A DNA stretch of 64,000 bases. It comes from Ascidiella aspersa (taxonomy: Eukaryota). Where the stretch lies: positions 7,626,001 to 7,690,000 of the forward strand of contig OZ004612.1 of the NCBI GenBank assembly GCA_963924565.1. Direction: 5' to 3'. The translations under genes were made by a program, and so were the position numbers. Of the stretch, positions 3,435 to 59,959 are shown in pieces. Under the pieces are notes generated by a model, which was given only the letters and a program-made list of their open reading frames with translations, was not told where the DNA came from and ran no database searches. Position 1 is the first letter of the stretch; each line of letters opens with the position of its first letter.

Positions 3435-6400
3435 ATGCTCGATTTTCTTTATCCAATTATCTGCTTCCTGGTAATCTCAACTAAATTCAAAACTGTTTTC
3501 GGTGAGTAGATTTTTGTTGGTCCATGATTGGCTTTTCAGCTACTAGTCTATTTAAGCCCAGCCAATATAGCAACATCATAATTGCTGTCGTGTATAATAA
3601 TTGGTTAATGTTAAAAATAAGTTTTAAAGTTTATACTTGTATATTACAAATTCCAGTTGAGGGCCACTACTTGGCGATCCGAAGGCGTGATTCCTCGTGT
3701 CGGGCGGAGGATGGATTTTTCCTCTGCGACAATTTGCAGTGCGTGCAAAGACAGCATGTCCTCGACTCCAGAATCGACTGCGCTGATGGGAGTGACCAGC
3801 GCTCACGTATGCCACATATTATTATCATAGCAAGACTTGATATACACTGAGCAGTGTAGACTATTGATTTTACCATGAATCCAACACAAGTCGAAAAGCT
3901 TTAAAAATTAATTATATATGTCCACCAGGAAAGAGCCCAGGATTTTCGTTTAGGGGAGCCGGGAAATTTTTCAGGAATGACATCACAAAGTTAAATTTTG
4001 TGAGGCCCGCGAATCGTTTTAAATTTTCGGCAAGAACTCAAATTATCTTCCACATTTCATCCTTTTTAACACCATTGTCTTGTGCTATTGCTAATTAACT
4101 GTCATTAAACCTAAATATCTTATTTAAAATTGGCCAGCTTGCCTGTTTAAAAATGAAAGATTTTGTCTAAGTAAGTTGTGTCATACATGCAACCTATACA
4201 CACGTTTTGCAGCTGAGGCGCATACAACGTTTGAATATTTAAAATTCTTGCTTAACTGGGTGGATATACTGATCTTTTGAACACTTTTTTATGGTTTTAA
4301 AATCAAGAAAAAAACAATGATTATTGGTGCCTTTGTCGCAAATTACAGTCGTAACATTTGCAACGTTTTCCGGATTCGTGGCACTTTCTGAGCTAGAAAA
4401 CATTTCTGTGGGCGCCCATACCACTCTATCACTATATATTTATAAATGCTGCTAAAAGTTAGTGTGTGTATCTACAAGTAAATCAGCGCAGGTGTGCCAC
4501 CAGCAAACGAAAAGAAATACTGTTAACAGCTTATTGCAGATACATTAAATAGGCCTATATTGATCATTTTAAAACGTTTTTGTTTCTTAGGTTTGTTGTT
4601 GCGGCTCACAGACGTAATCCAAATATGTCACAGGGTTCTCAGTAAGACTTGAGTTTGTCCCCCTGTAATAGTGCTAACCCCTGGGTGTACTAAGAAATGA
4701 GAAAACATAGCATTTAATTTTAATAATGTTTAATTTTCAAACTTCCTTTGGGAAACCGTAGATAAAAATGTGCCCTTAATGTGTTTGGATGCCTCAACTC
4801 AATTAATGAAGTTGTGCGCATAGAAACGCATGGTCCGCTTTAACTCAAGGCGACGAATTTACCTTCCAGCAATAAATTGCACGGACGACGAATTTCCTTG
4901 CCGATCGAGTTTCCGTTGCGTTCCGAGGCAGTTTGCGGTGGACGGATGTGTTCGTAAAAGAAACGTGATACTCGGGTGCAGAGAAGATAAAGGTTAGATA
5001 CGTCGCATACGACATAAGCTTTTAAACATATTTTTTTAACTGGAGGTTTGCAATATTAGTTGCTTTCTCATGTTTTCTTTAAGTCGTGAGGGCAAGGCGT
5101 AGTGAAATAAATGCTGAACTTCATTTTTACATATCCAAAAATCATAACTTTTGTGATATTGCCTTCATAAATTGGTGCCGCAGAATTCACTTGCCGCAAG
5201 ACTCGCCGCTGCATCCCGAGGTGGATGGTGATGGACGGAGAGAGGGATTGCGACACTTTGTCCCACAACGATTCAAGTGACGAGGAGCGCGGGTTCGAAT
5301 CCTGCACGAGCTCGGAGGTGCGCTGCCATCTTCCAGTCGGAAGTAGCTTAAAGAAGGCGCGCTGCATTCCGCGGGCGTGGGTCCGCGATAACATTACCGA
5401 TTGTCCGGGAACGGGAAGTGACGAAGTGGCGCCGTTGAGCTCCTGTAATAACGCAACCGAGTTTCGCTGCAAAGATAGCGGCGGATGCGTGCTGCGGTAT
5501 AGGGTAAGAGACGGATACTCGGATTGTGGCGACTCTTCCGACGAGCTTGAGCAAATTGCATGCAACAGAGACGAGTTTCATTGCCTCGATAGCGGAAGAT
5601 GCATTCCTGATACCTGGATTGGAAACAAAGTAAGCGACTGTCCAGACGGGAGCGATGAAAACGTGATTAGGCAACCAACAAACTGTTCGGCAAACCAGTA
5701 CTTATGCGCCTCATCGCGTCGATGTATTCCTCTTGAGTATTTATGCGACGGAATCGACAACTGTGGGGATTGTAGCGACGAAATCGAGAGTTGCAAAGAA
5801 CAAGGTTCGAAGATGTTTCGCTGCCCGAACCAACCAAGCACTTGTCTGTCTTGGCAGTATTCCTGTGACGCGTTAACTGACTGCCCGAATGGCGCCGACG
5901 ATATTACTTGGATGCCAGGCTTCAAGTGCCAAAAACTAGTTTTAAACTCGCCTACCGGCAAGAAATACTGCTCGGTGCCTCAATGGGCCTTACACGATCA
6001 GTTGCCTTGGTGCGACGACGGATCTGATATTTGCTTCGATGACAGAGGCGAGTTTCTGTGCTCAATGTGCTTGGACGGCAAGACCATCATAGCCAAGAGG
6101 CAGTTGTGTGATGGGATAATCGACTGTCCAGACCTTTCCGACGAGTGCCTATGCTCGAATGGTTTTAATACTATTGTCCTTACTGAAGTCTGCTCAAACG
6201 TGTGTTACAATACGGACCTACAGGGTGCTGCGTGTCGCAACTGCAGCGTTGGGCATTTCAAGTGCGATTCAAACTGCTTGGAAATAAATAAATTTTGCGA
6301 TGGCGTGGTAGATTGCCCAACATCCAAATCAGACGAGTTGTATTGCGCTGAAAATCAAAAACTTGTCAATGCAAAAAGTTCGAAGAACTTCGTTTGTGAC

Positions 6401-9400
6401 CTGATTACTCCCTTACATCGTACGTTGGCTGATATTCTTGGATTCACCTCATTCGCTGAAGGAGCGTTTGTGGAGAACGCCGTCGGGTAAATTAAATTTT
6501 CACATTGAGACACCTAAACTGAGAATATAGTTTAAATTGTACACAAACATCAAACTAAAGACAAAACTTTGTAGGCCTAAACCTACAGTCAGTTTGTTTC
6601 GATTTTATTATGATATATATGTTTCACTCCTATATTCCAGTCAAGCCATTTTGCCCTAATGAAACAGTAAATTAAGTTTTCTAAGTTAAGTCATTGGGTT
6701 AAGTCATAACAACACTGATGGAAACACAATAAAATAAAAAACAAGGGAAGATTGCGTTAGTTGAAAGAAAACTCTGAGTGCAAACGTAGCAGAAATGCGT
6801 CCACATTTTCGGCTTTTTAAGTATTTGATCTTTAGAAAGAATTTGTTTTTACCATCACTGTAGATGCGACGGAAAAGTGGAATGTCTTTATTTTGAAGAC
6901 GAATGCTCCCCTCGGGCAAATTGTAGCACAAGGCTCAAGGTTTGCGACAGCATTCCGATGAAAAAAGTTAGTATGTTACCAACCAAACTGTTCAACTTTG
7001 TTTTGTTAATTTACTGAGCATTATTTTTCCTAACAAGATACTGCATAGTAAACACACATTAAATACAAAGTGAAAGAACAGTATGTAATGAATATGCTGT
7101 TGCTGCCAGGCATACAATTGAACAAATGTATAGAAATGCGTTTAATAAATTAAAATTAAAAATTATTCTTAACGATAACTATCAGTTTTACATACTGCCA
7201 ACTATCACATCAACTTTAAGTGAAATATTAAATCAGGCGTTACAAATCCAACCCTGCTGCTACGCTTTCTTTACCGCCAGATAGTAATGCCCACTCTATG
7301 GACGAAGTTGTACAACGCGACAGGCAAGGAAATGAATCGTTTGTGCGGCGGTTTCCAGGAATACGTGATTGGATCTTCGATTTGCAACGGTGTTCAGGAA
7401 TGTAGCGAAAAGGAAGACGAGATTGATTGCGATCGTTTCTACTGCGACGCGGGAAAAGTGCCGTGGATCTCAGGTGAAAGCACATAAAAGCACACGACAC
7501 GAAAGGGAATTACGTTCCATTTTAGTTGGATTACAAAAGTTCCAGCTTCACTGTTGGCTGTTGATTAGCAATACCTGCCCCATGCAAGGTCATTAGGTTA
7601 CCCCGGGTCATTGTCCTCACCTGGTCTTCAGGTTACCCCAGGTCATTGACCTCATCTGTTCTTCAGGAAGTGCAAATCCACCGCGAGAAATCGCAAATGC
7701 CAATATATCCACATATTTCGAGTATTTCAAACCCAAAGGCGAAAACTCAGATTGTATTCAACTTAGGGTATTTGGGGTCACACTGAACAAACTCTTGGCA
7801 CAAAATGGATTGTAACAGACCGACATAAAATGAGAAACACAACACACACTAGACACAGATAAATAAATATTTATTTAGGACCAAGGCCAAAGATTAGTAT
7901 TCCTTGGTTGGAACGTTGCAATGGAGAGTTCGACTGCAAGGACAAAACGGACGAAATGAACTGCAACAAATCCACACATTTCTATTGCAAAAATAGAGAG
8001 CCTCTGTTTGTTGATCGCAAAAAGGTACGAGTATCACAACAAACGGCCATAGGTTGGTGGCATTGTGTTTATATTTCGCAAATTTATAGTTAATACTTTC
8101 AACAAACAATTTTTAACTAAAACCGTCATCGCCTTTTTATAAATAAAATAATTGAATTTATGAATTGCTGTTCATCAATATTTATAACTATACTAAATGC
8201 TGCGAGCCCTTTCGATAGGAAAGAACCACGTCGCAGAGATAGCGTCACGAAATTACGTCATAACCATAACACTACAAAGTTACATAAAAACGTAAAACGC
8301 CATAAAGATGTAACCTTAAGTGCTCCAGACAGTTCGTTTAAGTCTTAGGTTGGTGAGGTGTTACTTTCAAAGCCAAAGCTACATTATATATAAGCGCACA
8401 ACCTAAAAGACCTCAGAGTCGACTTTATTAAAAACAATTACACTATAACGCACCTTTGAGAGGATCGCCCTTTAACAAAACGTTACAAAAGATAAATGTG
8501 TTAACGCCGGACTTAATCGTGATTTTGGTTTCATGGCGCATCAAGCCTTTTAACATGTAGCTGAAACGCGAAATTTGGTCCGGGGCCAAAACTTATCCGG
8601 TCGGATCAATTTTGGCGTTGGAACAGCCGCTAAAACCGGTCCGGCTAGGCCTAAACTGGATCCCCTAACGCTAACCCTAACCTTAGCCAGACCTGTTTTA
8701 GCGGCTGTTCCAACGCCAAAATCGATCCGACCCGACCAGTTTGGCGCTTGATTACGACCAAAATCGATCCGACCGGACCAATTTCGGCGTGACAAAGCCA
8801 TATATCCCATAAAGAGATGCGATGCTACCCATGCTCTTGCGTGGATCCACGCATCAGCAAACCTGCGCCTATATGTGAATTGTTTGACCGAATATGTTCT
8901 ATCGCATTTTACTCTGTGCGTTTGCACATTTTTACCGTATATTCTTACTCTGACCTGATGATGCACTATTGTACAAAAGCTCATTAACACTAAATACAAA
9001 TTTTCAAAAGTGCCATTTGTTTTCAGTTTTAACATATATTTGTTATCAATTCCTGCAAAGCAATAAAGGCTATTATATCTTTCATCTTTCAGGTTGCCTA
9101 CAACTTCATTTACATCGGTGAAACAAACACCTTTAAGCTAAAACAATGACAAACCCAAACTCTGTTAGTTGATGTTTTTTTTAATTTTCTTAGGTTCTTG
9201 ACGGGAAGATCGATTGCACGGACTCATCCGACGAATGTCCGGAGGACTTTGCCGATAAGAGCGCCGTTTCCTCCAAGACCGAGATGATCAAGTCGCCCGT
9301 CCTCCGTGGCTTCGTTTGGCTCATGGCTATTTTAGCATTCTTCGGAAATGTCGCCGTGATCTTCAAGACGGTCAGGTTCATTTTCCATTCTCGAAAACGG

Positions 9401-10498: not shown

Positions 10499-10949
10499 AT
10501 TTTTATACTCGCTGTGCAGTATAGAAGTTTGTTCAAGTTTTGAACTTTTGACTACACGTTAAGGTTGTGATGCTGTAGCATCTTTTGTTTAATGCAAGTT
10601 CAAATGTTGTGTTTATTATTCCAGTAGAAAAAAACATTTTTGTTATTTTTTGTCTTATGTGAAATTCTGTTTGTAGACTGCACACTCATAGGGTTGTCTT
10701 GCGACTATTTATTTCATTTTTTTTTCTGTTGTTCTAAATTTAATTTATGAGATTATGAGGGTATAGGCTATAAACATTCCGAAACAGACAACGGACTGAG
10801 CGATCGTTTTATTGTTTGTAAATAGCACGGTTATGTATTCGATTTTAAAGCGTTTTTGTATTAAAATAATAAATTGTATATATGAAGTATTTAATGTGCA
10901 GCTAATGCAATAACATATAGCGAGCACACCATAACGTCATATGTTAAAC

Positions 10950-13958: not shown

Positions 13959-13960
13959 AT

Positions 13961-16900
13961 CTAAACTGCCGAGGTCGTGTTAGGGGAAGGAAAGTTGCCT
14001 TCTTTTGTCGATTGAGATCGCTCATCAGAAACAACGGGTTTAATGTTCATTCAAAACTTGGATAATTGTTCTCGGCAAAAACCCAAAGCCGTCGGTAAGG
14101 TATCGGAGTAAATTATTGGATTCAAAGCGCTGTTAATTGGCAACAGGATAACGGCGGAAAAGGCGTAAGCGAAGGAGGGCATGACCACTCCGCCCAAACT
14201 TAGAAAAGTCATAATGCAGATAGGCATCCAACAGCACATATCGGTTGCAATAAGGAAAGTGATCTTGCCTTGTATTGTAGCATTTCTAGCAGCAGAATCA
14301 GCCGCAGAACGAATGTCTGGTGTCTGTGCAGATCTTCGGTATATAATTACATATGCTACTAAAATATATAGCAAAGAAACGAAGCTAAACGTGATTGTCA
14401 CAGCGGAGTAAATGTTGAAACCTGACTCGTCACCTGACAAGCGATAAATCTTAGGTATACAGACGCCGTTAGCGCTGTAATAACCGTGAAAGCCTAAAAC
14501 ATCAGTGGTTTGATTAGGAAAGTGTTTCGATAGAAACTGAACCAATCCGCCCCAGTCCAGCGGTAAATTAGAAGTCGCATTTCCTGGCTGAAGTGCGTTT
14601 AAGCGCAATGCAAATTGCTTCAGTTCGTAAAGTTTCACCGTTCCTTGTTTGAAGTAAGGGCTTTTGGCAATCAGCATGTCTGTCACCATATACGTTGATA
14701 AATTATCGTTTAAAGGCATGAGAGCAATGAACAAAGCAACTGCCCAAATAGCTGCAAGATACCCAACAGCCACCCTAACTCTCAACTGGCGACTTTTGAA
14801 GGGCCACAGGACTCCATAAAGGCGATTAGACGTTAGAAGGATAAGGCTGAAGACGGATGCCTCGCTTGACAAAACTATGCTCACTCCCAGCGCACTGCAA
14901 GAAGAAATCGCTCGCCAAACCAATAGTTTCCCGAAAACTCAGCCGGACTTGGCGCCCAAGCCGAAAAGGCAACAGCCCATCAGCAAATCGGCAAAGGCGA
15001 GGTTGAGAACAAGAATGTTGTTAGTAACCGAAATAGACGATGCCTCCCGTTTTCGAGAATGGCAAAACGATTTGGACATGTCAAATAACTTTTGCAACCA
15101 AACAAAAAAACATTGCTTCATCGCTTACAGAACTTGAGTTCAGCGCCCAATTTCTTAAATGGCGAACAATTGCGACAAAATGTCTTGGACAAGACAAGGT
15201 ATTGAAACATTTACCAGAAGTCCACGGAACCCTTCCGGCGTCGCAGTAAAAGTGATCGCATTCGATTTCGTCCTCGCTTTTGCTGCATTCCTGAACACCG
15301 TTGCAAATCGACGAACCCACCAATCGTCGAACGGTACTCCAGGAAACCCCGGAAATTTCGGTTCATTTCCAAGCCCGTAGCTTTGTATGACTTGGCCCAC
15401 ACAAGAGGCATTACTATCTGACGAAAAGAACTGTATTCTAAGGACAATGTCGATTGGCTGCCTGTGCATGAAATTGCAGTGTGTTCGCTTGATATTCCAA
15501 GACTTCACTTCGATTTCCTCTATACTTGTTGGGTCTGAGTAACCTAGTCACAAACTGACCAGCTTTATCCCGACTTTGCGCTACAACTTCTAACCGCCTG
15601 AGCGGTAGAAAACGCTCACAAGACATGTTGTGTTGTGCTGTGAGCATTCGCTGAAAAGCGCAGTTATTCTGGATTTGGGAATGCAAAATAAATCACGAAG
15701 TCTAACGACATACGCAGGTTGAAATATCGAGGCTATTTTGCCTAGTTTTGATGAAGTCCTGTCGGGCAGTCAATCTCCCTTGTAGAAACATACAGCATTA
15801 AGTATAATGGTAGAATCCGCTACGCTACGTAAATCTTTGGGTGACATTTAACATCAGCTAGTATGAACACTAAGTTTTCTCTAAAACTGGGCAATTTATT
15901 TATTAGAGTAAGTTAATTTTGTTATTGTTTGAATCCCATTAAAGGCTTATTAGATATTAACATATATTATTTTTTTGTGTATTCATAATTCAAAACAATT
16001 TGTTTAGGCGTACTTCAATGTTTTAGTCTTAATATTGGTTTTAGATGCATTTAAATATTTTTAATAAAAATAACCCGTTAGAAAACAAACCTTACTTTTT
16101 TCATTGGAATGCTGTCGCAAATGCTGAGCCTTGTGTTACAGTTTGCCCGCGGAGAGCATTCGTCATCAAAATAAAGACATTCCACTTTTCCCTCGCATCT
16201 ATAGATAAAAAAATATTTTCATAGTAAAAATGACAGTTAAAAAAACTTAAAATGTGTCTCAGTATTTGTGCGACTTAAACTGGTATCCCGCTATTAGGAA
16301 TTTTGTTTGTTAGGATTAAAATTACCCGACACCGTTGTCGACAAACGCTCCTTCAGTGAACGAAGCCAATTTGAGGATGTCGGCCAACGTACGATGTAAG
16401 GGAGTAATCGGGTCACAAACGAAGGTCTTCGGACTTTTTGCAACGACAAGTTTTTGATCTTTAGCGCAATACAACTCGTCTGATTTGGATGTCGGGCAAT
16501 CTACCACGCCATGGCAAAACTTATTTCTCGCCAAACAGTTTGAATCGCACTTGAAATGCCCGACGCTACAGTTACGACACACAGCACCCTGCAGGTCCGT
16601 ATTGGAACACAGGTTCGAGCAGACCTCAGTGACAGTTGTATTACAACCATTCGAGCATAGGCACTCGTCGGAAAGGTCTGGACAGTCAATTATCCCATCA
16701 CACAGCTGTCTCTTGGCTACGATGGTCTTACCGTCCAAGCACAGAGAGCACAGAAACTCGCCTCTGTCATCGAAGCAAATATCAGATCCGTCGTCGCACC
16801 AAGGCAACTGATCGTGTAAGGTCCATTGAGGCACTGAGCAGTATTTCTTGCCTGTGGGCGAGTTTAAAACTAGTTTTTGGCACTTGAAGCCTGGCATCCA

Positions 16901-38180: not shown

Positions 38181-38182
38181 AT

Positions 38183-46200: not shown

Positions 46201-49200
46201 AAGAACTTCGTTTGTGACCCGATTACTCCCTTACATCGTACGTTGGCTGACATTTTTCGATTCGCCTCTTTCGCTGAAGAAGCGTTTGTGGAGAACGCTG
46301 TCGGGTAAATTAATTTTTCACATTAAGATACCTAAACTGAGAATATAGTTTAAATTGTACACATAGTATAGGATAAACATCAAACTAAAAACAAAACTTT
46401 GTAGCCTGAACCTAAAGTCAGTTTATTTCGATTTTATTATGATATATATGTTTCATTTCTTGACTCCAGTCAAGCCATTTTGCCCTAATGAAACAGTAAA
46501 TCAATTTACTTAAGTTAAGTCATTGACTTAAGTCATAACAACACTGATGGAAACACACAAAAAAATGTAAAACAAGGGAAGATTGCGTTAGTTGAAAGAA
46601 AACAAACGTAGCAGAAATGCGTCCACATTTTCGGCTTTTTAAGTATTTGATTTTAGAAAGAATTTGTTTTTACCATCACTGTAGATGCGACGGAAAAGTG
46701 GAGTGTCTTTATTTTGAAGACGAATGCTCCCCTCGGGCAAATTGTAGCACAAGGCTCAAGGTTTGCGACAGCATTCCAATGAAAAAGTTAGTATGTGAAT
46801 ACCCAAGTGTTCAATTTTGTTTTGTTAATTTACTGAGAATTATTTTTCCTGACAAGATACTGCATAGTAAACATACATTAAATTCAAAGTGAAAGACCGG
46901 TATATAATGAATATGCTGTTGCTGCAAAAAATATTTCGGCAAAAATATTTCTTAAAAAAACATGTGTATATATATATATATATAAATAAATTGTATTGGA
47001 ATACGTTTAATAAATTAAAATGAAAAATTATTCTCGACGATAACTATCAGTTTTACCTGCTGCCAACTATCACATCAACTTTAAGTGAAATGTTAAATCA
47101 GGCGTTACAAATCTAACCCTGCTGCTACGCTTTCTTTACCGCCAGATAGTAATTCCCACTTTATGGACGAAGTTGTACAACGCGACAGGCAAGGAAATGA
47201 ACCGCATGTGTGGCGGTTTTCTGGAATACGTGCTGGGATCTTCAATTTGCAATGGTGTTCAGGAATGTAGCGAAAAGGAAGACGAGACCGAATGCGATCG
47301 TTTCTACTGCGACGCGGGAAAAGTACCGTGGATCACAGGTGAAAGCACATAAAAGCACACGACTTGTAATTCCTTAATACGACACGAAAGGCAATTACGT
47401 CACATGTTGGTGGGTTTACAAAAATTCCATCTCCACTGTTGGCTGTTGATTAGCAAAACCTGCATTTCTAAAGAGTGCCAAATGACGTGGGGTGCCTTTT
47501 TTTATCAAAATCAGTTGACTTAAAATATTGTTTAAAGATTTGCCTATTTGGGGGCACACTGAACAAACTTTTGGGTTTGCACAAAACGGATTGTAACAGA
47601 CCGACATAAAATAAGAAGCACAACACACACTAGATACAGATACATAAATATTTATTTAGGAGTAAGACCAAAGATTAGTATTCCTTAGTTGGAACATTGC
47701 AACGGAGAGTTCGATTGCAAGGACAAAACGGACGAAATGAACTGCAACAAATCCACACATTTCTATTGCAAAAACGAAGAGCCTCTGTTTGTTGACCGCG
47801 AAAAGGTAGTATTATAACGAACGGCCATAGTTGATGGCATTGTGTTTATATTTCTCAAAGATATAGTTAATAACTTCAACAAATAAATTTTTACTAGAAC
47901 CGTCATCGCCTTTTTATCAATAAAATAATTGAATTTACAAATGGCTGTTCATCAATATTTATAACAATACTAAATGCTGCGAGCCCTTTCGATAGGAAAA
48001 ACCACGACGAAGATATAGCGTCACGAAATTACGTCATAACCATAACACCACAAAGTTACATCAAAACGTAAAACGCCATAAAGATACAATAGGGTGAAAA
48101 AAAACTGGTCCGCCTTAACCCTAACCCTAACCCTAACCCTAGCCAGACCTGTTTTAGCGGCTGTTCCAACGCCAAAATCGATCCTACCGGGCCAGTTTTG
48201 GCGCTTGATTACGACCAAAATCGATCCGGCCGGACCGATTTTGGCCAGACCAATTTTGGCGTGACATATCTAGCCATATATCCCATTAAGAGATGCGATG
48301 CCACCCATGCTCTTGCGTGGGTCCACGCATCAGCAAACCTGCGCTTATAAGTGAATTGTTTGACCGAATATGTTTTATCGCATTTTACTCTGTGCGTTTG
48401 CACATTTTCACCGTTTTCTTATTCAAAAAAATAATTTAACCTATATTTGTTAACAATTCCTGCAAAGCAATAAAGGCTATTAAATCTTTCATCTTTCAGG
48501 TTGCCAACAACTTCATTTACATCGGTGAAACAAACACCTTTAAGCTAAAACAATGACAAACCCAAACTCTGCTAGTTGATGTTTTTTTTAATTTTCTTAG
48601 GTTCTTGACGGGAAGATCGATTGCACGGACTCATCCGACGAATGTCCGGAGGACTTTGCCGATACGAGCGCCGTTTCCTCCAAGACCGAGATGATAAAGT
48701 CGCCCGTCCTCCGCGGCTTCGTTTGGCTCATGGCTATTTTAGCATTCTTCGGAAATGTCGCCGTGATCTTCAAGACGGTCAGGTTCATTTTCCATTCTCG
48801 AAAACGGGAGGCATCGTCTATTTCGATTATTAACAACATCTTTGTTCTTAACCTCGCCTTTGCCGATTTACTGATGGGCTGTTGCCTTTTCGGCTTGGGC
48901 GCCAAGTCGGCTGAATTTTCGGGAAACTATTGCTTGGAAGACTTGGTCTGGCGAGCGAGTTCTTCTTGCAGTGCACTGGGAGTGAGCATAGTTTTGTCAA
49001 GCGAGGCATCCGTCTTCACACTTATCCTTCTAACATCTTATCGCCTCTACGGAGTCCTGTTGCCCTTCAAAAGTCGTCAGTTGAGAGTTAGGGTGGCTGT
49101 TGGGTATCTTGCAACTATTTGGGCAGTTGCTTTGTTCATTGCTCTCATGCCCTTGAGCGATATTTTATCAACGTATATGGTGACAGACATGCTGATATCC

Positions 49201-49905
49201 AAAAGTCCTTACTTTAAAGAAGGAACGGTGAAACTTTACGAACTGGAGCAATTTGCATTGCGCTTAAACGCACTTCAACCTGGAAATGCGACTTCTAATT
49301 TACCGCTGGACTGGGGCGGATTGGTTCAGTTCCTGTCGAAAAACTTTCCTAATCAAACCACTGAAGTTTTAGGCTATCACGGGTATTACAGCGCTAACGG
49401 CGTCTGTATACCTAAGATTTATCGCTTGTCAGGTGACGAGTCAGGTTTCAACATTTACTCCGCTGTGACAATCACGTTTAGCTTCGTTTCTTTGCTATAT
49501 ATTTTAGTAGCTTATGTCATTATATACCGAAGATCTTCACAGAAACCAAACATTCGTTCAGCTTCGGCTTCTGCAGCTAGAAATGCTGGAATGCAACGCA
49601 AGATCACTTTCCTTATTGCAACCGATATGTGCTGTTGGATGCCCATCTGTATTATGACTTTTCTAAGTATGGGCGGAGTGGTTTTGCCCTCCTTTGCTTA
49701 CGCCTTTTCCGCCGTTATCCTGTTGCCAATTAACAGCGCTTTAAATCCAATAATTTACTCCGATACCTTTCCGACCGCTTTAGGTTTTTGTCGAACGCAT
49801 CTTTTAAAGTTCCGCACCAAGACTAAACCCGTTTTTTCTGAGCAGCGATCTCAATCGACAAAAGAAGGCAACTTGCCTTCCCCTAAAACGACTTCAGGAC
49901 TATAG
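43277..49905 (+). pseudogene. Chimeric LDLa-GPCR copy B2 (type B 5' half, A-like 3' half); ectodomain disabled, 7TM exon open
   Basis: Exons 43277-43343, 43501-43650, 44716-44838, 45031-46304, 46685-46786, 47146-47338, 47660-47805, 48601-49905. Lesions: 30-bp deletion after 45604, +A at 45618-45621, -A at 46782-46786, TGG>TAG at 47686-47688. Confidence 0.88.
48090..48266. mobile_element. Partial palindromic element with (TAACCC)4 in intron 7 of B2
   Basis: Right half of the 8562-8794 element with four perfect TAACCC units at 48116-48139. The left arm and adjacent intron are deleted. Confidence 0.65.
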
Positions 49906-50690: not shown

Positions 50691-53600
50691 TGTACCTATA
50701 TAGTTTCTTTGTGGTAATATTTATTTCCTATTTCTTTTCGAAAATAACTTTTATGATTCACGATTGTTTATAATGAGGGGTGAAAGTAAAATAATTTTTT
50801 TGTCGTAACAATAATAAATTTTCTTACCGCAATAGGTACATGGAAATTTTCAGAGATGAAGTCAGAAAGTTACGTCGTAAAAGGACGTTCTAAAAAACGT
50901 AAACTTCTAACACCTGAGGGTTTTGTTCGATGTAGTGCACGAATATGCAAGGAAGGAACGGCGTCCGGATAGTTACGGCTTACTTTTACCAGTTGATGTA
51001 ATACGCATTAAAATGTTTACTGCATATTGAGTTACTATTAAGTCACTATACGATGTGTAAACTTATCAGACAGTTTTAAACACAAGTGTAAAATGAGACG
51101 TTATAAACAGCCAAACTGAGGAAGCTTTCGACTAGTACATATCAACATAGGAGTGTGGAAGATATGAAAGAATTTAACAATTACAAAGAACAAAAAGCAA
51201 ATCAGTACTTATACACTGTACATAGAAAATGTTTAGTAATATTCACTCATAAACGAGCGCATTCGACTCCGAAATATACAGAACGACGCTTGCTATTTAA
51301 AACGATTTTTACTTGCCCTTATATAGGTTACATCGGCCAGATGTTGGTAGTTAAGCTTTTGTGACATACGATCAGTAAAGTGACTTGAAATCAGGCTTAC
51401 AACACACGAAATAACAACACAGAAAATTCTGGACATTTATCAAAACGCGGCCAGGAGTGTTTGGCGTGACCGCTGCCTAATCCTAACAAAATTTTCCGCA
51501 ACCAATACAACAGTGACAAATCCTGCGATGTCTCATTGCAAAGTATAACACATAAAGGATAATAATAAAACGCAAAGTGGCATCTGTTTCGGCTTTTACA
51601 ACATCATAATGTCTTACCTCCCAAGACGGGTGAATCTGAATGGCGATAATTATGTTTTTCATGTCAACGCCTAAAATATGTCATCTAACTTAATCAAGTG
51701 CACAGTGTTTATACTATAACGGCACAGTGCTTTATATTGGTTAATGGTTGTTTTGTTATAAAGTCTGTTTGAAATTATGTAATGTAGAACGACCATGGTC
51801 TAATACTCTAATAGGACGTTTATATCAATACGCCATAAGCTACAGTGGTGTTGATTTTTTACTTATATTTTTTTCCATCTGCTTCGCACGGGCGACCTTA
51901 CAAGACTTTACTTCTTTTTACGTTTAGTTTATTATAAGAAATTTGAATCAATTTTCGGACTATATTATATTACATGATACAGACTTAAGATGGCGCCAGT
52001 ACAAGAAAGTCTTGCGTCATGCCGTCCAAATTACGAAATGAAAAATAAGGCCGTTGAATGATCCACGCTTAACTTTCCGGTAAACACCCATAGATACGTG
52101 CCATTGTGCTTGGTGCAGCTAACCACTAAAGTCACGTTTCTATGCGTCAACGAGCAACTCCAAACCACAAGTTTATGTTTCCAAAGTTGCCAGCCTATAT
52201 TCAAACTTAGCCATATAGTGAGTAGCTTTAAACAATTTAGTTTTTTATACCTTATGCCGCAGTAAATTACGAAGAATATGTTTTCGTTCATGAGTTTAGT
52301 TCAATTAAATATGGTTTCCTGTTTCAGGGTGACTAGTCTACCAAGGTTAAAATAAATAATAATAACACGAATCAAAGTACAAGAAAAAACGATCAATATT
52401 TTAGCTTTCAGCAACAGGCCTATTATACAACATGCTCGATTTTCTTTATCCAATTATCTGCTTCCTGGTAATCTCAACTAAATTCAAAACTGTTTTCGGT
52501 GAGTAGATTTTTGTTGGTCCATGATTGGCTTTTGAGCTACTAGTCTATTTAAGCCCAGCCAATATAGCAACATCATAATTGCTGTCGTGTATAATAATTG
52601 GTTAATGTTAAAAATAAGTTTTAAAGTTTATACTTGTATATTACAAATTCCAGTTGAGGGCCACTAATTGGCGATCCGAAGGCGTGATTCCTCGTGTCGG
52701 GCGGAGGATGGATTTTTCCTCTGCGACAATTTGCAGTGCGTGCAAAGACAGCATGTCCTCGACTCCAGAATCGACTGCGCTGATGGGAGTGACCAGCGCT
52801 CACGTATGCCACATATTATTATCATAGCAAGACTTGATATACACTGAGCAGTGTAGACTATTGATTTTACCATGAATCCAACACAAGTCGAAAAGCTTTA
52901 AAAATTAATTATATATGTCCACCAGGAAAGAGCCCAGGATTTTCGTTTAGGGGAGCCGGGAAATTTTTCAGGAATGACATCACAAAGTTAAATTTTGTGA
53001 GGCCCGCGAATCGTTTTAAATTTTCGGCAAGAACTCAAATTATCTTCCACATTTCATCCTTTTTAACACCATTGTCTTGTGCTATTGCTAATTAACTGTC
53101 ATTAAACCTAAATATCTTATTTAAAATTGGCCAGCTTGCCTGTTTAAAAATGAAAGATTTTGTCTAAGTAAGTTGTGTCATACATGCAACCTATACACAC
53201 GTTTTGCAGCTGAGGCGCATACAACGTTTGAATATTTAAAATTCTTGCTTAACTGGGTGGATATACTGATCTTTTGAACACTTTTTTATGGTTTTAAAAT
53301 CAAGAAAAAAACAATGATTATTGGTGCCTTTGTCGCAAATTACAGTCGTAACATTTGCAACGTTTTCCGGATTCGTGGCACTTTCTGAGCTAGAAAACAT
53401 TTCTGTGGGCGCCCATACCACTCTATCACTATATATTTATAAATGCTGCTAAAAGTTAGCGTGTGTATCTACAAGTAAATCAGCGCAGGTGTGCCACCAG
53501 CAAACGAAAAGAAATACTGTTAACAGCTTATTGCAGATACATTAAATAGGCCTATATTGATCATTTTAAAACGTTTTTGTTTCTTAGGTTTGTTGTTGCG

Positions 53601-56600
53601 GCTCACAGACGTAATCCAAATATGTCACAGGGTTCTCAGTAAGACTTGAGTTTGTCCCCCTGTAATAGTGCTAACCCCTGGGTGTACTAAGAAATGAGAA
53701 AACATAGCATTTATTTTTAATAATGTTTAATTTTCAAACTTCCTTTGGGAAACCGTAGATAAAAATGTGCCCTTAATGTGTTTGGATGCCTCAACTCAAT
53801 TAATGAAGTTGTGCGCATAGAAACGCATGGTCCGCTTTAACTCAAGGCGACGAATTTACCTTCCAGCAATAAATTGCACGGACGACGAATTTCCTTGCCG
53901 ATCGAGTTTCCGTTGCGTTCCGAGGCAGTTTGCGGTGGACGGATGTGTTCGTAAAAGAAACGTGATACTCGGGTGCAGAGAAGATAAAGGTTAGATACGT
54001 CGCATACGACATAAGCTTTTAAACATATTTTTTTAACTGGAGGTTTGCAATATTAGTTGCTTTCTCATGTTTTCTTTAAGTCGTGAGGGCAAGGCGTAGT
54101 GAAATAAATGCTGAACTTCATTTTTACATATCCAAAAATCATAACTTTTGTGATATTGCCTTCATAAATTGGTGCCGCAGAATTCACTTGCCGCAAGACT
54201 CGCCGCTGCATCCCGAGGTGGATGGTGATGGACGGAGAGAGGGATTGCGACACTTTGTCCCACAACGATTCAAGTGACGAGGAGCGCGGGTTCGAATCCT
54301 GCACGAGCTCGGAGGTGCGCTGCCATCTTCCAGTCGGAAGTAGCTTAAAGAAGGCGCGCTGCATTCCGCGGGCGTGGGTCCGCGATAACATTACCGATTG
54401 TCCGGGAACGGGAAGTGACGAAGTGGCGCCGTTGAGTTCCTGTAATAATGTAACCGAGTTTCGCTGCAAAGATAGCGGCGGATGCGTGCTGCGGTATAGG
54501 GTAAGAGACGGATACTCGGATTGTGGCGACTCTTCCGACGAGCTTGAGCAACTTGCATGCAACAGAGACGAGTTTCATTGCCTCGATAGCGGAAGATGCA
54601 TTCCCGATACCTGGATTGGGAACAAAGTAAGCGACTGTCCAGACGGAAGCGATGAAAAGGTGATTAGGCAACCAACAAACTGTTCGGCAAACCAGTTCTT
54701 ATGCGCCTCATCGCGTCGATGTATTCCTCTTGAGTATTTATGCGACGGAATCGACAACTGCGGGGATTGTAGCGACGAGATCGAGAGTTGCAAAGAACAA
54801 GGTCCGAAGATGTTTCGCTGCCCGAACCAGCCAAGCACTTGCCTGTCTTGGCAGTATTCCTGTGACGCGTTAACTGACTGCCCGAATGGCGCCGACGATA
54901 TTACTTGGATGCCAGGCTTCAAGTGCCAAAAACTAGTTTTAAACTCGCCTACCGGCAAGAAATACTGCTCAGTGCCTCAATGGGCCTTACACGACCAGTT
55001 GCCTTGGTGCGACGACGGATCCGATATATGCTTCGATGACAGAGGCGAGTTTCTGTGCTCAATGTGCTTGGACGGCAAGACCATCATAGCCAAGAGGCAG
55101 TTGTGTGATGGGATAATCGACTGTCCAGACCTTTCCGACGAGTGCCTCTGCTCGAATGGTTTTAATACGACTGTCCTTACTGAAGTCTGCTCAAACGTGT
55201 GTTACAATACGGACCTACAGGGTGCTGCGTGTCGCAACTGCAGCGTTGGGCATTTCAGGTGCGATTCAAACTGCTTGGAAATAAATAAATTTTGCGATGG
55301 CGTGGTAGATTGCCCAACATCCAAATCAGACGAGTTGTATTGCGCTGAAAATCAAAAACTTGTCAATGCAAAAAGTTCGAAGAACTTCGTTTGTGACCTG
55401 ATTACTCCCTTACATCGTACGTTGGCTGATATTCTTGGATTCACCTCATTCGCTGAAGGAGCGTTTGTGGAGAACGCCTTCGGGTAAATTAAATTTTCAC
55501 ATTGAGACACCTAAACTGAGAATATAGTTTAAATTGTACACAAACATCAAACTAAAGACAAAATTTTGTAGGCCTAAACCTACAGTCAGTTTGTTTCGAT
55601 TTTATTATGATATATATGTTTCACTCCTATATTCCAGTCAAGCCATTTTGCCCTAATGAAACAGTAAATTAAGTTTTCTAAGTTAAGTCATTGGGTTAAG
55701 TCATAACAACACTGATGGAAACACAATAAAATAAAAAACAAGGGAAGATTGCGTTAGTTGAAAGAAAACTCTGAGTGCAAACGTAGCAGAAATGCGTCCA
55801 CATTTTCGGCTTTTTAAGTATTTGATCTTTAGAAAGAATTTGTTTTTACCATCACTGTAGATGCGACGGAAAAGTGGAATGTCTTTATTTTGAAGACGAA
55901 TGCTCCCCTCGGGCAAATTGTAGCACAAGGCTCAAGGTTTGCGACAGCATTCCGATGAAAAAAGTTAGTATGTTACCAACCAAACTGTTCAACTTTGTTT
56001 TGTTAATTTACTGAGCATTATTTTTCCTAACAAGATACTGCATAGTAAACACACATTAAATACAAAGTGAAAGAACAGTATGTAATGAATATGCTGTTGC
56101 TGCCAGGCATACAATTGAACAATTGTTCTTCTGCCAAAATATTTCCTAAAAAACGTACATATTTATATATATATTTAATGTATAGAAATGCGTTTAATAA
56201 ATTAAAATTAAAAATTATTCTTAACGATAACTATCAGTTTTACATACTGCCAACTATCACATCAACTTTAAGTGAAATATTAAATCAGGCGTTACAAATC
56301 CAACCCTGCTGCTACGCTTTCTTTACCGCCAGATAGTAATGCCCACTCTATGGACGAAGTTGTACAACGCGACAGGCAAGGAAATGAATCGTTTGTGCGG
56401 CGGTTTCCAGGAATACGTGATTGGATCTTCGATTTGCAACGGTGTTCAGGAATGTAGCGAAAAGGAAGACGAGATGGATTGCGATCGTTTCTACTGCGAC
56501 GCGGGAAAAGTGCCGTGGATCTCAGGTGAAAGCACATAAAAGCACACGACTCGAAAGGGAATTACGTTCCATTTTAGTTGGATTACAAAAGTTCCAGCTT

Positions 56601-56638
56601 CACTGTTGGCTGTTGATTAGCAATACCTGCCCCATGCA

Positions 56639-56704
56639 AGGTCATTAGGTTACCCCGGGTCATTGTCCTCACCTGGTCTTCAGGTTACCCCAGGTCATTG
56701 ACCT
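56639..56704 (+). promoter_or_regulatory. Nuclear-receptor half-site cluster in intron 6 of A3
   Basis: Same sequence as 7587-7652. Confidence 0.4.
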
Positions 56705-57613
56705 CATCTGTTCTTCAGGAAGTGCAAATCCACCGCGAAAAATCGCAAATGCCAATATATCCACATATTTCGAGTATTTCAAACCCAAAGGCGAAAACTC
56801 AGATTGTATTCAACTTAGGGTATTTGGGGTCACACTGAACAAACTCTTGGCACAAAATGGATTGTAACAGACCGACATAAAATGAGAAACACAACACACA
56901 CTAGATACAGATAAATAAATATTTATTTAGGACCAAGGCCAAAGATTAGTATTCCTTGGTTGGAACGTTGCAATGGAGAGTTCGACTGCAAGGACAAAAC
57001 GGACGAAATGAAATGCAACAAATCCACACATTTCTATTGCAAAAATAGAGAGCCTCTGTTTGTTGATCGCAAAAAGGTACGAGTATCACAACAAACGGCC
57101 ATAGGTTGGTGGCATTGTGTTTATATTTCGCAAATTTATAGTTAATACTTTCAACAAACAATTTTTAACTAAAACCGTCATCGCCTTTTTATCAATAAAA
57201 TAATTGAATTTACGAATTGCTGTTCATCAATATTTATAACTATACTAAATGCTGCGAGCCCTTTCGATAGGAAAGAACCACGTCGCAGAGATAGCGTCAC
57301 GAAATTACGTCATAACCATAACACTACAAAGTTACATAAAAACGTAAAACGCCATAAAGATGTAACCTTAAGTGCTCCAGACAGTTCGTTTAAGTCTTAG
57401 GTTGGTGAGGTGTTACTTTCAAAGCCAAAGCTACATTATATATAAGCGCACAACCTAAAAGACCTCAGAGTCGACTTAATTAAAAACAATTACACTATAA
57501 CGCACCTTTGAAAGGATCGCCCTTTAATAAAACGTTACAAAAGATAAATGTGTTAACGCCGGACTTAATCGTGATTTTGGTTTCATGGCGCATCAAGCCT
57601 TTTAACATGTAGC

Positions 57614-57804
57614 TGAAACGCGAAATTTGGTCCGGGGCCAGAACTTATCCGGTCGGATCAATTTTGGCGTTGGAACAGCCGCTAAAACAGGTCCGGCTAG
57701 GCCTAAACTGGATCCCCTAACGCTAACCCTAACCTTAGCCAGACCTGTTTTAGCGGCTGTTCCAACGCCAAAATCGATCCGACCGGAACAATTTCGGCGT
57801 GACA
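57614..57804. mobile_element. Palindromic TAACCC-core element in intron 7 of A3 (lacks one 42-bp subrepeat)
   Basis: Copy of 8562-8794 missing one AAAATCGATCCGACC-containing unit. Confidence 0.7.
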
Positions 57805-59959
57805 AAGCCATATATCCCGTTAAGAGATGCGATGCTACCCATGCTTTTGCGTGGGTCCACGCATCAGCAAACCTGCGCCTATATGTGAATTGTTTGACCG
57901 AATATGTTCTATCGCATTTTACTCTGTGCGTTTGCACATTTTTACCGTATATTATTACTCTGACCTGATGATGCACTATTGTACAAAAGCTCATTAACAC
58001 TAAATACAAATTTTCAAAAGTGCCATTTGTTTTCAGTTTTAACATATATTTGTTATCAATTCCTGCAAAGCAATAAAGGCTATTATATCTTTCATCTTTC
58101 AGGTTGCCTACAACTTCATTTACATCGGTGAAACAAACACCTTTAAGCTAAAACAATGACAAACCCAAACTCTGTTAGTTGATGTTTTTTTTAATTTTCT
58201 TAGGTTCTTGACGGGAAGATCGATTGCACGGACTCATCCGACGAATGTCCGGAGGACTTTGCCGATAAGAGCGCCGTTTCCTCCAAGACCGAGATGATCA
58301 AGTCGCCCGTCCTCCGTGGCTTCGTTTGGCTCATGGCTATTTTAGCATTCTTCGGAAATGTCGCCGTGATCTTCAAGACGGTCAGGTTCATTTTCCATTC
58401 TCGAAAACGGAAGGCATCGTCTATTTCGATTATTAACAACATCTTTGTTCTTAACCTCGCCTTTGCCGATTTACTGATGGGCTGTTGCCTTTTCGGCTTG
58501 GGCGCCAAGTCGGCTGAATTTTCGGGAAACTATTGCTTGGAAGACTTGGTCTGGCGAGCGAGTTCTTCTTGCAGTGCGCTGGGAGTGAGCATAGTTTTGT
58601 CAAGCGAGGCATCCGTCTTCACACTTATCCTTCTCACGTCTTATCGCCTCTACGGAGTCCTGTTGCCCTTCAAAAGTCGTCAGCTGAGAGTTAGGGTGGC
58701 TGTTGGGTATCTTGCAGCTATTTGGGCAGTTGCTTTGTTTATTGCTCTCATGCCCTTGAGCGATATTTTATCAACGTATATGGTGACAGACATGCTGATT
58801 GCCAAAAGCCCATACTTTAAACGAGGAACGGTGAAACTTTACGAACTGGAGCAATTTGCATTGCGCTTAAACGCACTTCAGCCTGGAAATGAGACTTCTA
58901 ATTTACCGCTGGACTGGGGCGGATTGGTTCAGTTCCTGTCGAAACACTTTCCTAATCAAACCACTGATGTTTTAGGCTTTCACGGTTATTACAGCGCTAA
59001 CGGCGTCTGTATACCTAAGATTTATCGCTTGTCAGGTGACGAGTCAGGTTTCAACATTTACTCCGCTGTGACAATCACGTTTAGCTTCGTTTCTTTGCTA
59101 TATATTCTAGTAGCTTATGTCATGATATACCGAAGATCTGCACACAAACCAGACATTGGTTCAGCTTCGGCTTCTGCACCTAGAAATGCTAAAATACAAC
59201 GCAAGATCACTTTCCTTATTGCAACCGATATGTGCTGTTGGATGCCCATCTGTATTATGACTTTTCTAAGTATGGGCGGAATGGTCATGCCCTCCTTCGC
59301 TTACGCCTTTTCCGCCGTTATCCTGTTGCCAATTAACAGCGCTTTAAATCCAATAATTTACTCCGATACATTACCAATCGCTTTAGGTTTTTGTCGAGCG
59401 CATCTTTTAAAGTTCCGCACCAAGAATAAACCCGTTTTTTCTGAGCAGCGATCTCAATCGACAAAAGAAGGCAACTTGCCTTCCCCTTACACGACTTCAG
59501 GACTATAGATTTTTATACTCGCTGTGCAGTATAGAAGTTTGTTCAAGTTTTGAACTTTTGACTACATGTTAAGGTTGTGATGCTGTAGCGTCTTTTGTTT
59601 AATGCAAGTTCAAATGTTGTATTTATTATTCCAGTAGAAAAAAACATTTTTGTTATTTTTTGTCTTATGTGAAATTCTGTTTGTAGACTGCACACTCATA
59701 GGGTTGTCTTGTGACTATTTATTTCATTTTTTTTTCTGTTGTTCTAAATTTAATTTATGAGATTATGAGGGTATAGGCTATAAACATTCCGAAACAGACA
59801 AAGGACTGAGCGATCGTTTTATTGTTTGTAAATAGCACGGTTATGTATTCGATTTTAAGGCGTTTTTGTATTAAAATAATAAATTGTATATATGAAGTAT
59901 TTAATGTGCAGCTAATGCAATAACATATAGCGAGCATGCCATAACGTCATATGTTAAAC

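What the first reader, a model, noticed from the sequence alone, without database searches (positions are those of the whole stretch)
3435..59508. Expanding tandem family of LRR-less GPCRs with about 15 LDLa modules fused directly to an RXFP/GRL101-type 7TM
Seen: splicing the fragmentary ORFs gives one 1129-aa receptor. The last LDLa module (split over exons 7 and 8, VLDGKIDCTDSSDEC) runs straight into AVSSKTEMIKSPVLRGFVW and TM1, leaving no room for leucine-rich repeats. Known: RXFP1/2 have one LDLa plus LRRs, and GRL101 has many LDLa plus LRRs. In RXFPs the LRRs are the main peptide-binding site. LRR-less LDLa GPCRs (LDLRR-GPCRs) are described from Ciona as orphans. Inference: ligand capture must rely on the LDLa array, and at least nine full or partial copies in 64 kb with rapid birth and death look like a recognition repertoire (immune, allorecognition, lipoprotein or chemosensing) rather than a hormone receptor.
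Basis: partly seen in the sequence, partly recalled or inferred. Interest (0 to 1): 0.8.

Follow-up and report, generated by a model that had tools for sequence, protein, structure and literature searches.

The report
Sea-squirt LDLa receptor gene cluster
This is a cluster of recently duplicated sea-squirt genes for a cell-surface receptor that joins about 15 LDL-receptor-type modules directly to a relaxin-receptor-like membrane domain, a family already described from Ciona in 2008, so it is a sound annotation and not a new kind of receptor.

Summary
It encodes a signal peptide, 15 LDLa-like modules, an RXFP1-like hinge and a 7TM domain closest to RXFP1. No leucine-rich repeats (LRRs) were found by Pfam, by tblastn or by a motif scan. 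Paralogues in the same genome carry the last-LDLa-to-TM1 junction inside one uninterrupted ORF.

The window holds nine full or partial copies:
- Intact: A1, A2, C1.
- Broken: A3 (nonsense) and C2 (frameshift).
- Truncated inverted pseudogenes: three B copies.
- One fragment of exon 8.

They sit in a ~24-kb higher-order repeat. The cluster spans about 143 kb and has 9 intact genes out of 18 loci.

The genome is a tunicate's. In a 7TM tree the genes fall inside the tunicate clade with the Ciona members. That makes them the LDLRR-GPCR family of Kamesh et al. 2008, a new member of a known kind.

The "recognition repertoire" idea is not supported. dN/dS is 0.17-0.28 between copies and never reaches 1 in any sliding window.

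RNA evidence was uninformative. The true copy number could not be checked by read depth.

The scan had already noted this family elsewhere in this genome (s1-791258, s1-805317).

The parts
3435..3501 (+). Copy A1 exon 1: start codon and hydrophobic signal-peptide-like N-terminus (MLDFLYPIICFLVIS...), ends in phase 1 with donor GTGAGT
   Evidence: Read directly; model check
3657..3806 (+). A1 exon 2: LDLa module 1, which lacks Cys4
   Evidence: Pfam Ldl_recept_a 22.9 bits; local HMM iE 1.9e-7
4870..4992 (+). A1 exon 3: LDLa module 2 (N-terminal half plus degenerate rest) and Cys1 of module 3. The donor is at 4993; the upstream GT at 4954 is lost in C-type copies
   Evidence: the extension ...GCREDxG is conserved in paralogues L005 and L006
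5184..6486 (+). A1 exon 4: nine LDLa-like modules plus a 30-aa tail, ending in phase 2 at donor GTAAAT
   Evidence: Pfam 134.9 bits, 8 stretches; HMM; the phase-2 GTAAGT-type donor is conserved in L005-L008
6864..6966 (+). A1 exon 5: C-terminal half of module 12 (CDGKVECLYFEDEC) and N-terminal half of module 13
   Evidence: the acceptor before TGYGAYGG is conserved in all paralogues
7281..7473 (+). A1 exon 6: C-terminal half of module 13 and N-terminal half of module 14
7879..8024 (+). A1 exon 7: C-terminal half of module 14 (CNGEFDCKDKTDEMNC) and N-terminal half of module 15
   Evidence: Pfam 26.9 bits; aligns to residues 423-460 of the single-ORF paralogue L004
9194..10498 (+). A1 exon 8: C-terminal half of module 15 (VLDGKIDCTDSSDEC), hinge AVSSKTEMI, 7TM with a ~70-aa structured ECL2 insert, NPIIY, a 47-aa tail and the stop
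   Evidence: 7tm_1; RXFP1 7tmw E 9e-28; AF2 model pLDDT 83.9; Foldseek best matches TSHR, RXFP1, LHCGR
19090..25685 (+). Copy C1: intact 8-exon paralogue, 1129 aa, about 93% aa identity to A1
27604..34722 (+). Copy A2: intact, 1129 aa, about 98% aa identity to A1
43277..49905 (+). Copy C2: pseudogene with a 29-nt net deletion in exon 4 (frameshift) and the exon 5 donor changed from GT to TT
52432..59508 (+). Copy A3: all splice sites intact, but codon 27 (exon 2) is TAA where A1 has TAC
13971..17609 (-). Copy B1: inverted truncated pseudogene holding only e4, e5, e6 and e8 from nt 188, with in-frame TGA stops
38193..41778 (-). Copy B2: inverted truncated pseudogene, heavily broken
63360..64000 (-). 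Copy B3: inverted truncated pseudogene that runs off the window end
1156..1516 (+). Fragment: the last 361 nt of a C-type exon 8, at a duplication junction

Best explanation
The window is the middle of a ~143-kb cluster of paralogous genes in a tunicate genome. The genes belong to the tunicate LDLRR-GPCR family, meaning LGR type-C/RXFP-like receptors that have lost their leucine-rich repeats.

Shown. Each intact gene has 8 exons and encodes 1129 aa: a signal peptide, 15 LDLa-like modules and then the RXFP-type hinge motif (V-S-S...M-I), directly followed by a rhodopsin-class 7TM. Ten of the 15 modules keep the acidic cluster after Cys5, and several have lost the Cys4-Cys6 pair. The second extracellular loop (ECL2) carries a ~70-residue insert that folds in the model, followed by the motif C-I-P-K. 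The cluster grew by segmental duplication of a ~24-kb unit (gene A, inverted dead gene B, gene C) and of shorter ~16-kb units. Sequence has been exchanged between copies, and about half the copies are now dead. The surviving copies are under purifying selection.

Inferred. The N-terminal LDLa array captures a ligand in the calcium-dependent way of LDL-receptor modules. The conserved membrane-proximal modules, together with the hinge and ECL2, pass this on to the 7TM by the ECL2/hinge switch known from RXFP1. In this reading the LDLa stalk and the ECL2 cap take over the braking role that the LRRs have in RXFP1.
For: Gene model: the 1129-aa ORF with all GT-AG sites is the same in 9 intact copies of the cluster.

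Coding constraint: dN/dS is 0.17-0.28 at dS up to 0.28.

No LRR:
- Pfam exon by exon at E<=1 finds none.
- tblastn with LRR-bearing RXFP1 and GRL101 proteins hits only the LDLa and 7TM exons.
- The window has no tandem LRR motif on either strand.
- The last four modules are each split across an intron into complementary halves.
- Single-ORF paralogues L001-L004 (861-1811 aa) have 4-28 Ldl_recept_a plus 7tm_1 and no LRR.
- L004 residues 423-460 and 460-852 align to e7 and e8 without a gap.
- Paralogue L007 has e7 and e8 fused in one ORF.

Family:
- The best PDB sequence match is RXFP1 at 9e-28, against LHCGR at 7e-15.
- Foldseek places LGRs at the top.
- The nearest proteins are from Ciona, Phallusia, Clavelina and Styela, with PF00057 plus PF00001 only.
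- The tunicate clade has SH-aLRT 99, and the window genes group with Ciona members.
- The family is described in PMC2396169.

Mechanism leads:
- The hinge residues that control RXFP1 (I396/S397, L402/L403) and the ECL2 CxPx motif are aligned and conserved.
- Their role in RXFP1 comes from bioRxiv 10.1101/2022.01.22.477343.
- The ECL2 insert is predicted folded at pLDDT 80-92.
Against: There is no transcript evidence. RNA run X4, sampled at 6%, gave no read at 99% identity or above and no splice joint, so expression and the exon joins rest on comparative evidence only.

The ligand, the G-protein coupling and the proposed braking role of the LDLa stalk are all untested.

The second hydrophobic residue of the LGR ECL2 motif is Lys or Arg in nearly all tunicate members. 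In RXFP1, a charged residue introduced at that position (L566D) almost abolished signalling, so the switch may work differently here.

Copies that are 97-99.5% identical in a highly polymorphic animal could partly be assembly duplications.
Confidence: 0.8

Rival explanations
1. One reading: the array is a fast-evolving recognition repertoire (immune, allorecognition, lipoprotein or chemosensory) whose LDLa arrays diversify to bind many targets.
For: The family is very large in this genome: at least 103 scored loci and 322 first-look candidates. The number of LDLa modules ranges from 4 to 28 among paralogues. Local birth and death is evident. The 2008 paper reports Ciona ESTs of the family mostly from blood cells and haemocytes.
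Against: Within the cluster the ectodomain is more constrained than the 7TM (dN/dS 0.13-0.25 against 0.19-0.62). No sliding window reaches 1 (maximum 0.42). The central modules have dN/dS 0.02-0.06. All intact copies keep exactly 1129 codons, with no gain or loss of modules. No expression data exist for this species.
Confidence: 0.2
2. Part of the array is an assembly over-expansion: allelic haplotypes or collapsed-repeat errors laid out in tandem, so the true copy number is lower.
For: The 24-kb units are 97-99.45% identical, which is within the heterozygosity typical of ascidians (general knowledge). A2 and A3 differ at only 6 of the 1103 residues of the provisional model. Read depth could not be used as a copy number (caveats).
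Against: At least 4 A-type copies exist, more than two haplotypes can give. They carry private lesions (A3 nonsense, C2 deletion while its counterpart g10 is intact) and unit lengths differ (24.2, 24.8 and about 16 kb). A-type and C-type variants, for example at 4952 and 4954, occur in contigs of DNA runs X1, X2 and X3.
Confidence: 0.15
3. The genes are transcriptionally silent relics, or the LDLa exons and the 7TM exon belong to separate transcripts.
For: No RNA read supports any junction.
Against: Purifying selection acts on both parts. All 14 splice sites are conserved in 9 copies. Half-modules are complementary across every one of the last four introns. Single-ORF paralogues have the same order of parts.
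Confidence: 0.07

Closest known systems
Ciona LDLRR-GPCRs (Kamesh et al. 2008, BMC Evol Biol 8:129, PMC2396169)
   Same: N-terminal LDLa repeats, a 7TM most like INSL3/relaxin receptors, no LRRs, and lineage-specific expansion in a tunicate. In the 7TM tree the window genes sit in the same clade as Ciona intestinalis and C. savignyi members.
   Different: There are 15 modules here against 1-10 reported for Ciona. The family is far larger in this genome (at least 103 loci against 14 confirmed plus 14 unclassified). This subfamily has 7 introns and forms a higher-order tandem/inverted array. Best identity to any database protein is only 48%.
RXFP1/RXFP2 (LGR7/8, type C1 LGR)
   Same: Closest solved 7TM (E 9e-28). 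An LDLa module lies N-terminal of the 7TM. The hinge motif I-S-S...L-L is conserved as V-S-S...M-I, and the ECL2 sequence YYxxxGVC-hydrophobic-P is conserved.
   Different: There are no LRRs, which are the relaxin-binding and autoinhibitory domain of RXFP1. There are 15 LDLa modules instead of 1. ECL2 has a ~70-aa insert, and Lys or Arg replaces the second hydrophobic residue of its motif.
GRL101 (Lymnaea) and GRL101-like type C2 LGRs
   Same: Many LDLa modules ahead of an RXFP-like 7TM. NCBI names the tunicate relatives 'GRL101-like'.
   Different: GRL101 proteins keep LRRs between the LDLa array and the 7TM (P0042, P0045, P0051 and P0057 carry PF13855/PF12799). They fall outside the tunicate clade.
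LDL receptor / LRP family
   Same: Arrays of calcium-binding LDLa modules used to capture ligands.
   Different: Those proteins are single-pass endocytic receptors with EGF and YWTD propeller domains. None of these domains was found here.

Membership tests
Tunicate LDLRR-GPCR (Kamesh 2008) | One or more LDLa modules N-terminal of the 7TM | tested here: met
   Pfam Ldl_recept_a in e2-e7; 15 modules by the local HMM
Tunicate LDLRR-GPCR (Kamesh 2008) | Rhodopsin-class 7TM most similar to INSL3/relaxin receptors | tested here: met
   7tm_1; RXFP1 is the best PDB sequence hit at 9e-28; LGRs are the top Foldseek hits
Tunicate LDLRR-GPCR (Kamesh 2008) | No leucine-rich repeats | tested here: met
Tunicate LDLRR-GPCR (Kamesh 2008) | 7TM groups with Ciona family members, apart from LRR-bearing type C LGRs | tested here: met
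   Quick ML tree: tunicate clade SH-aLRT 99, and the sub-clade holds Ciona P0005, P0012 and P0040. There was no glycoprotein-hormone-receptor outgroup, and the RXFP1 row was short (220 aa).
Tunicate LDLRR-GPCR (Kamesh 2008) | LDLa array and 7TM on one transcript and protein | tested here: inconclusive
   RNA run X4 gave no junction reads. Indirect support comes from single-ORF paralogues and split modules.
Type C LGR (RXFP1/2, GRL101) | Leucine-rich-repeat ectodomain between LDLa and hinge | tested here: not met
   uninterrupted paralogue ORFs
Type C LGR (RXFP1/2, GRL101) | Hinge residues and the ECL2 motif C-hydrophobic-P-hydrophobic | tested here: inconclusive
   The hinge V-S-S..M-I is conserved. 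ECL2 reads C-I-P-K, and the tunicate clade has Lys or Arg at the fourth position in nearly all members.
Type C LGR (RXFP1/2, GRL101) | Activated by a relaxin or insulin-like peptide | not testable with these tools
   Needs a ligand assay
LDL receptor family | EGF-precursor region with YWTD propeller and a single-pass membrane anchor | tested here: not met
   No such Pfam families in the exons or in the paralogue ORFs

The most novel reading that the evidence does not exclude
This tunicate carries an exceptionally large family of LRR-less LDLa-GPCRs: over 100 loci, with 4 to 28 LDLa modules. A clade-specific folded ECL2 cap and a C-x-P-K/R switch would replace the LRR brake of relaxin receptors. 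The number of N-terminal LDLa modules, and not point substitution, would tune what each receptor binds. That would make it a module-number-based recognition or lipoprotein-sensing repertoire, expressed in blood cells.
Probability: 0.2. Interest if true: 0.65.

Novelty: new member of a known kind. Interest (0 to 1): 0.4.

Why it matters
The work gives a precise, comparatively validated gene model for an unannotated tunicate receptor family, and it shows that the LRR-less design is a property of the family and not a modelling gap.

It also offers a natural experiment for relaxin-receptor mechanics. In RXFP1, removing the LRRs makes the 7TM constitutively active through ECL2. These receptors have done exactly that in evolution while keeping the hinge and changing ECL2. 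Testing them could show what else can restrain or trigger that switch.

The ligand of the family has been unknown since 2008. Otherwise this is a lineage-specific GPCR expansion of an ordinary kind.

Tried and rejected
1. My first splice model (1103 aa; e3 ending at 4953, e4 at 6419, e5 starting at 6836) was open and GT-AG, but I rejected it. C-type copies lack the 4954 donor. Paralogues at 45-66% identity conserve the longer ORF extensions, the phase-2 GTAAGT donor and the acceptor before TGYGAYGG.

2. RNA support. The one read-laying run on 3400-9399 with RNA run X4 and three other runs gave no splice evidence. X1 and X2 cover the introns evenly and are therefore DNA.

3. Read depth as a copy number is not usable, following the tool's own caveats.

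4. LRR search by tblastn with five LRR-bearing relatives and by regex found nothing. There were five scattered loose motif hits in introns, none in tandem.

7. The literature search found no paper on this family beyond Kamesh 2008.

8. The joined (spliced) protein was never given to any search or fold tool. Searches were run exon by exon. The joined CDS was used only inside scripts for length, stops and dN/dS, and it was not printed.
Full report
**What is in the window**

A self-comparison shows a higher-order repeat of about 24.2 kb present about 2.6 times at 97-99.45% identity. Shorter matches at 87-96.7% link the genes inside a unit. ORF listing and Pfam show two recurring large ORFs. One is a ~421-aa Cys-rich ORF with Ldl_recept_a (E 4e-35). 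The other is a 404-434-aa ORF with 7tm_1. Mapping the exons of one copy back onto the window gives nine full or partial copies:
- A1 3435-10498 (+)
- B1 13971-17609 (-)
- C1 19090-25685 (+)
- A2 27604-34722 (+)
- B2 38193-41778 (-)
- C2 43277-49905 (+)
- A3 52432-59508 (+)
- B3 from 63360 (-)
- an exon-8 fragment at 1156-1516

**Gene model**

I read the splice sites directly and first built an open, all-GT-AG model of 1103 aa. It failed a comparative test. C-type copies have lost the GT at 4954. More distant paralogues fetched from the same genome (L005 at 66%, L006 at 53% and L007 at 45% identity in the 7TM) conserve three things: the longer reading frame at the ends of exons 3 and 4, a phase-2 GTAAGT donor, and an acceptor immediately before TGYGAYGG.

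The corrected model is e1 3435-3501, e2 3657-3806, e3 4870-4992, e4 5184-6486, e5 6864-6966, e6 7281-7473, e7 7879-8024, e8 9194-10498. It is 3390 nt and 1129 aa, has no internal stop and has GT-AG at every intron.

The same model is intact in A1, A2 and C1. A3 has TAC changed to TAA at codon 27. C2 has a 29-nt net deletion in exon 4 and a TT in place of the exon 5 donor. The B copies lack e1-e3, e7 and the first 187 nt of e8, and they carry in-frame TGA stops.

The joined protein was never handed to a search or fold tool. All searches were exon by exon.

**Modules**

Pfam exon by exon finds Ldl_recept_a in e2, e3, e4 (8 stretches), e5 (faint), e6 and e7, and 7tm_1 in e8. No LRR family appears at E<=1. 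A local HMM built from 40 canonical modules of two paralogues counts 15 modules:
- one in e2
- one in e3
- nine in e4
- four that are each split by an intron into an N-terminal and a C-terminal half (e4|e5, e5|e6, e6|e7, e7|e8)

Ten modules keep the acidic cluster after Cys5. Read directly, modules 3-6 lack both Cys4 and Cys6.

**No leucine-rich repeats**

Five lines of evidence agree.
1. Pfam finds none.
2. tblastn of five LRR-bearing relatives (hamster RXFP1, scallop GRL101, sea urchin and coral GRL101-like, and one unnamed) hits only the LDLa and 7TM exons at E<=10.
3. A motif scan finds five scattered loose LRR-core matches in introns, none strict. No tandem pair occurs anywhere in the window on either strand.
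4. The complementary half-modules across the last four introns leave no place for inserted exons.
5. The junction is seen inside uninterrupted ORFs in paralogues.
   - L001-L004 are single ORFs of 861-1811 aa with a signal peptide, 4-28 Ldl_recept_a and 7tm_1, and no LRR hit at E<=1.
   - L004 residues 423-460 align to e7 and residues 460-852 to e8 with no gap.
   - L007 has e7 and e8 fused in one ORF (...THFYCQSGSPLYVAKERVLDGKTDCSDFSDEC...).

**What family it is**

The 7TM exon's best solved relative is RXFP1 (7tmw, E 9e-28), ahead of LHCGR (7e-15) and TSHR. An AlphaFold2 model of exon 8 built on 52 aligned sequences (mean pLDDT 83.9, pTM 0.82) has TSHR, RXFP1, LHCGR, FSHR and LGR4 as its top Foldseek matches.

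The nearest database proteins are 42-48% identical. They carry PF00057 plus PF00001 only, and where named they come from Ciona intestinalis, C. savignyi, Phallusia, Clavelina and Styela ('GRL101-like', 'relaxin receptor 1-like'). The genome is therefore a tunicate's.

In a quick ML tree of 56 7TM domains, all tunicate sequences form one clade (SH-aLRT 99) apart from the LRR-bearing RXFP1/GRL101 set. The window genes group with Ciona, Clavelina and Phallusia members. The single-ORF paralogues sit in another tunicate sub-clade with a C. savignyi protein.

This is the LDLRR-GPCR family of Kamesh et al. 2008. That paper describes:
- 14 Ciona members with 1-10 LDLa modules
- no LRRs
- 7TM domains like those of INSL3/relaxin receptors
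- ESTs mostly from blood cells
- no known ligand

I found no later paper on the family.

**The cluster and the family in this genome**

The window is C6:7,626,001-7,690,000 of a 308.6-Mb assembly. I fetched 30 kb to the left and 70 kb to the right. The cluster runs from 7,609,286 to 7,752,032 and holds:
- 12 full-length copies, 9 intact and 3 broken
- 5 truncated inverted B pseudogenes
- 1 fragment

Genome-wide, the 7TM exon has 322 first-look candidates. All 103 that were scored have E<1e-59. Seventy of them lie in open frames of 731-1811 aa, which means apparently intronless genes with ectodomain plus 7TM. Two such proteins are not in the public protein collection.

**Selection**

Pairwise Nei-Gojobori dN/dS among eight intact copies is 0.17-0.28 for the whole gene, apart from one near-identical pair (A2-g08) at 0.43 on dS 0.017. 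dS ranges up to 0.28. The ectodomain (0.13-0.25 where dS is informative) is more constrained than the 7TM (0.19-0.62). Sliding windows of 75 codons range from 0.02 to 0.42, and the minimum is at codons 324-448. That stretch is also the one best conserved in the distant single-ORF paralogues. All intact full-length copies with e1 keep exactly 1129 codons.

dS is mosaic. A1 against g09, for example, gives 0.158 in the ectodomain and 0.018 in the 7TM, which points to conversion or unequal exchange between copies. These data show working genes under purifying selection, and they give no sign of a diversifying recognition surface.

**How it probably works (inference)**

Aligned to RXFP1, the residues just before TM1 (AVSSKTEMI) match the hinge positions I396/S397 and L402/L403. 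The ECL2 sequence YYSANGVCIPK matches YYGANGVCFPL.

In RXFP1, ECL2 F564 and L566 occupy the orthosteric pocket and activate the receptor, and the hinge leucines stabilise this. I396/S397 and the LRRs restrain it, and the 7TM without LRRs is constitutively active (bioRxiv 10.1101/2022.01.22.477343).

The tunicate receptors keep the hinge and the C-hydrophobic-P part of the motif. Nearly all of them have Lys or Arg at the fourth position. They also carry a ~70-residue insert in ECL2 that the model predicts to be folded, with two short strand pairs and two helices at pLDDT 80-92.

My best reading is that the variable N-terminal LDLa array binds a ligand, while the conserved proximal modules plus the ECL2 cap take the braking and releasing role of the LRRs. 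None of this was tested.

**Limits**

RNA run X4 (6% read) laid 26 reads, none at 99% identity or above and most only partly aligned, with no splice joints. This neither supports nor refutes expression.

X1 and X2 cover exons and introns alike and are DNA. Together with X3 they carry both A-type and C-type variants (for example at 4952 and 4954), so at least those two paralogue types are real outside the assembly. Depth cannot be read as copy number.

**Verdict**

The architectural interpretation is supported. The functional interpretation as a repertoire is not supported. The family is known from Ciona, so this is a new member of a known kind: a larger and unannotated expansion in another tunicate. 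Earlier first-stage notes of this scan had flagged the same family on other pieces of this genome.

Noticed in passing
G000 genome-wide; loci L001-L004: The family is very large in this genome: at least 103 scored 7TM matches and 322 candidates. About 70 lie in single open frames of 731-1811 aa, which look like intronless genes. Several dense clusters exist, for example C2:35.3-36.7 Mb with about 20 copies of 861-892 aa. One member (L003) has 28 Pfam LDLa stretches.
   Followed up: partly
window 9749-9979 (exon 8 residues ~186-262): There is a ~70-residue insert in ECL2 relative to RXFP1. It is conserved across the tunicate family (FPNQ motif) and is predicted by AlphaFold2 as a small folded alpha/beta unit at pLDDT 80-92.
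   Followed up: partly
window 10001-10012 (C-I-P-K in ECL2): The LGR-wide ECL2 motif C-hydrophobic-P-hydrophobic reads C-[IMLV]-P-[KR] in nearly all LRR-less tunicate receptors, but C-[LFI]-P-[LM] in most of the non-tunicate relatives, two of which have Ala in place of Pro. The change coincides with loss of the LRRs.
   Followed up: partly
window 5184-5700 (modules 3-6): Several N-terminal LDLa modules have only four cysteines, having lost Cys4 and Cys6 together, yet they keep the acidic D-x-S-D-E cluster.
   Followed up: no
window 8400-8800 and ORF 8550-9035 (-), intron 7: A high-copy repeat lies here: DNA-contig depth is 5-20 times that of its surroundings. It overlaps a 161-aa antisense ORF that recurs in every A-type unit and in L008. 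The ORF has no Pfam match. It is probably a transposable-element remnant.
   Followed up: partly
window 6304->6861, 6972->7277, 7992->9189 (run X1): Three contig joints of near-equal depth (55-61, about a tenth of neighbouring depth) start or end within a few to 32 bases of exon ends, but not at the splice sites. They could come from a paralogue with shortened introns, from a processed copy, or from an alignment artefact at 90% likeness.
   Followed up: no
L007 291-1745 (-) = G000:C9:4117290-4118744: A 45%-identical paralogue lacks intron 7: exons 7 and 8 form one ORF. Other subfamilies lack all introns. The family therefore shows intron loss or gain, or expansion by retroposition.
   Followed up: no
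cluster C6:7,609,286-7,752,032: dS between copies is mosaic. A1 against g09, for example, gives 0.158 in the ectodomain and 0.018 in the 7TM. This indicates gene conversion or unequal crossing-over. Beyond the window the repeat unit shortens from about 24 kb (A-B-C) to about 16 kb.
   Followed up: partly
L006 2863-3567 (+) = G000:C1:24952862-24953566: An ORF with weak retroelement integrase and SH3 (Tf2-1-like) matches lies upstream of a paralogue's exons.
   Followed up: no
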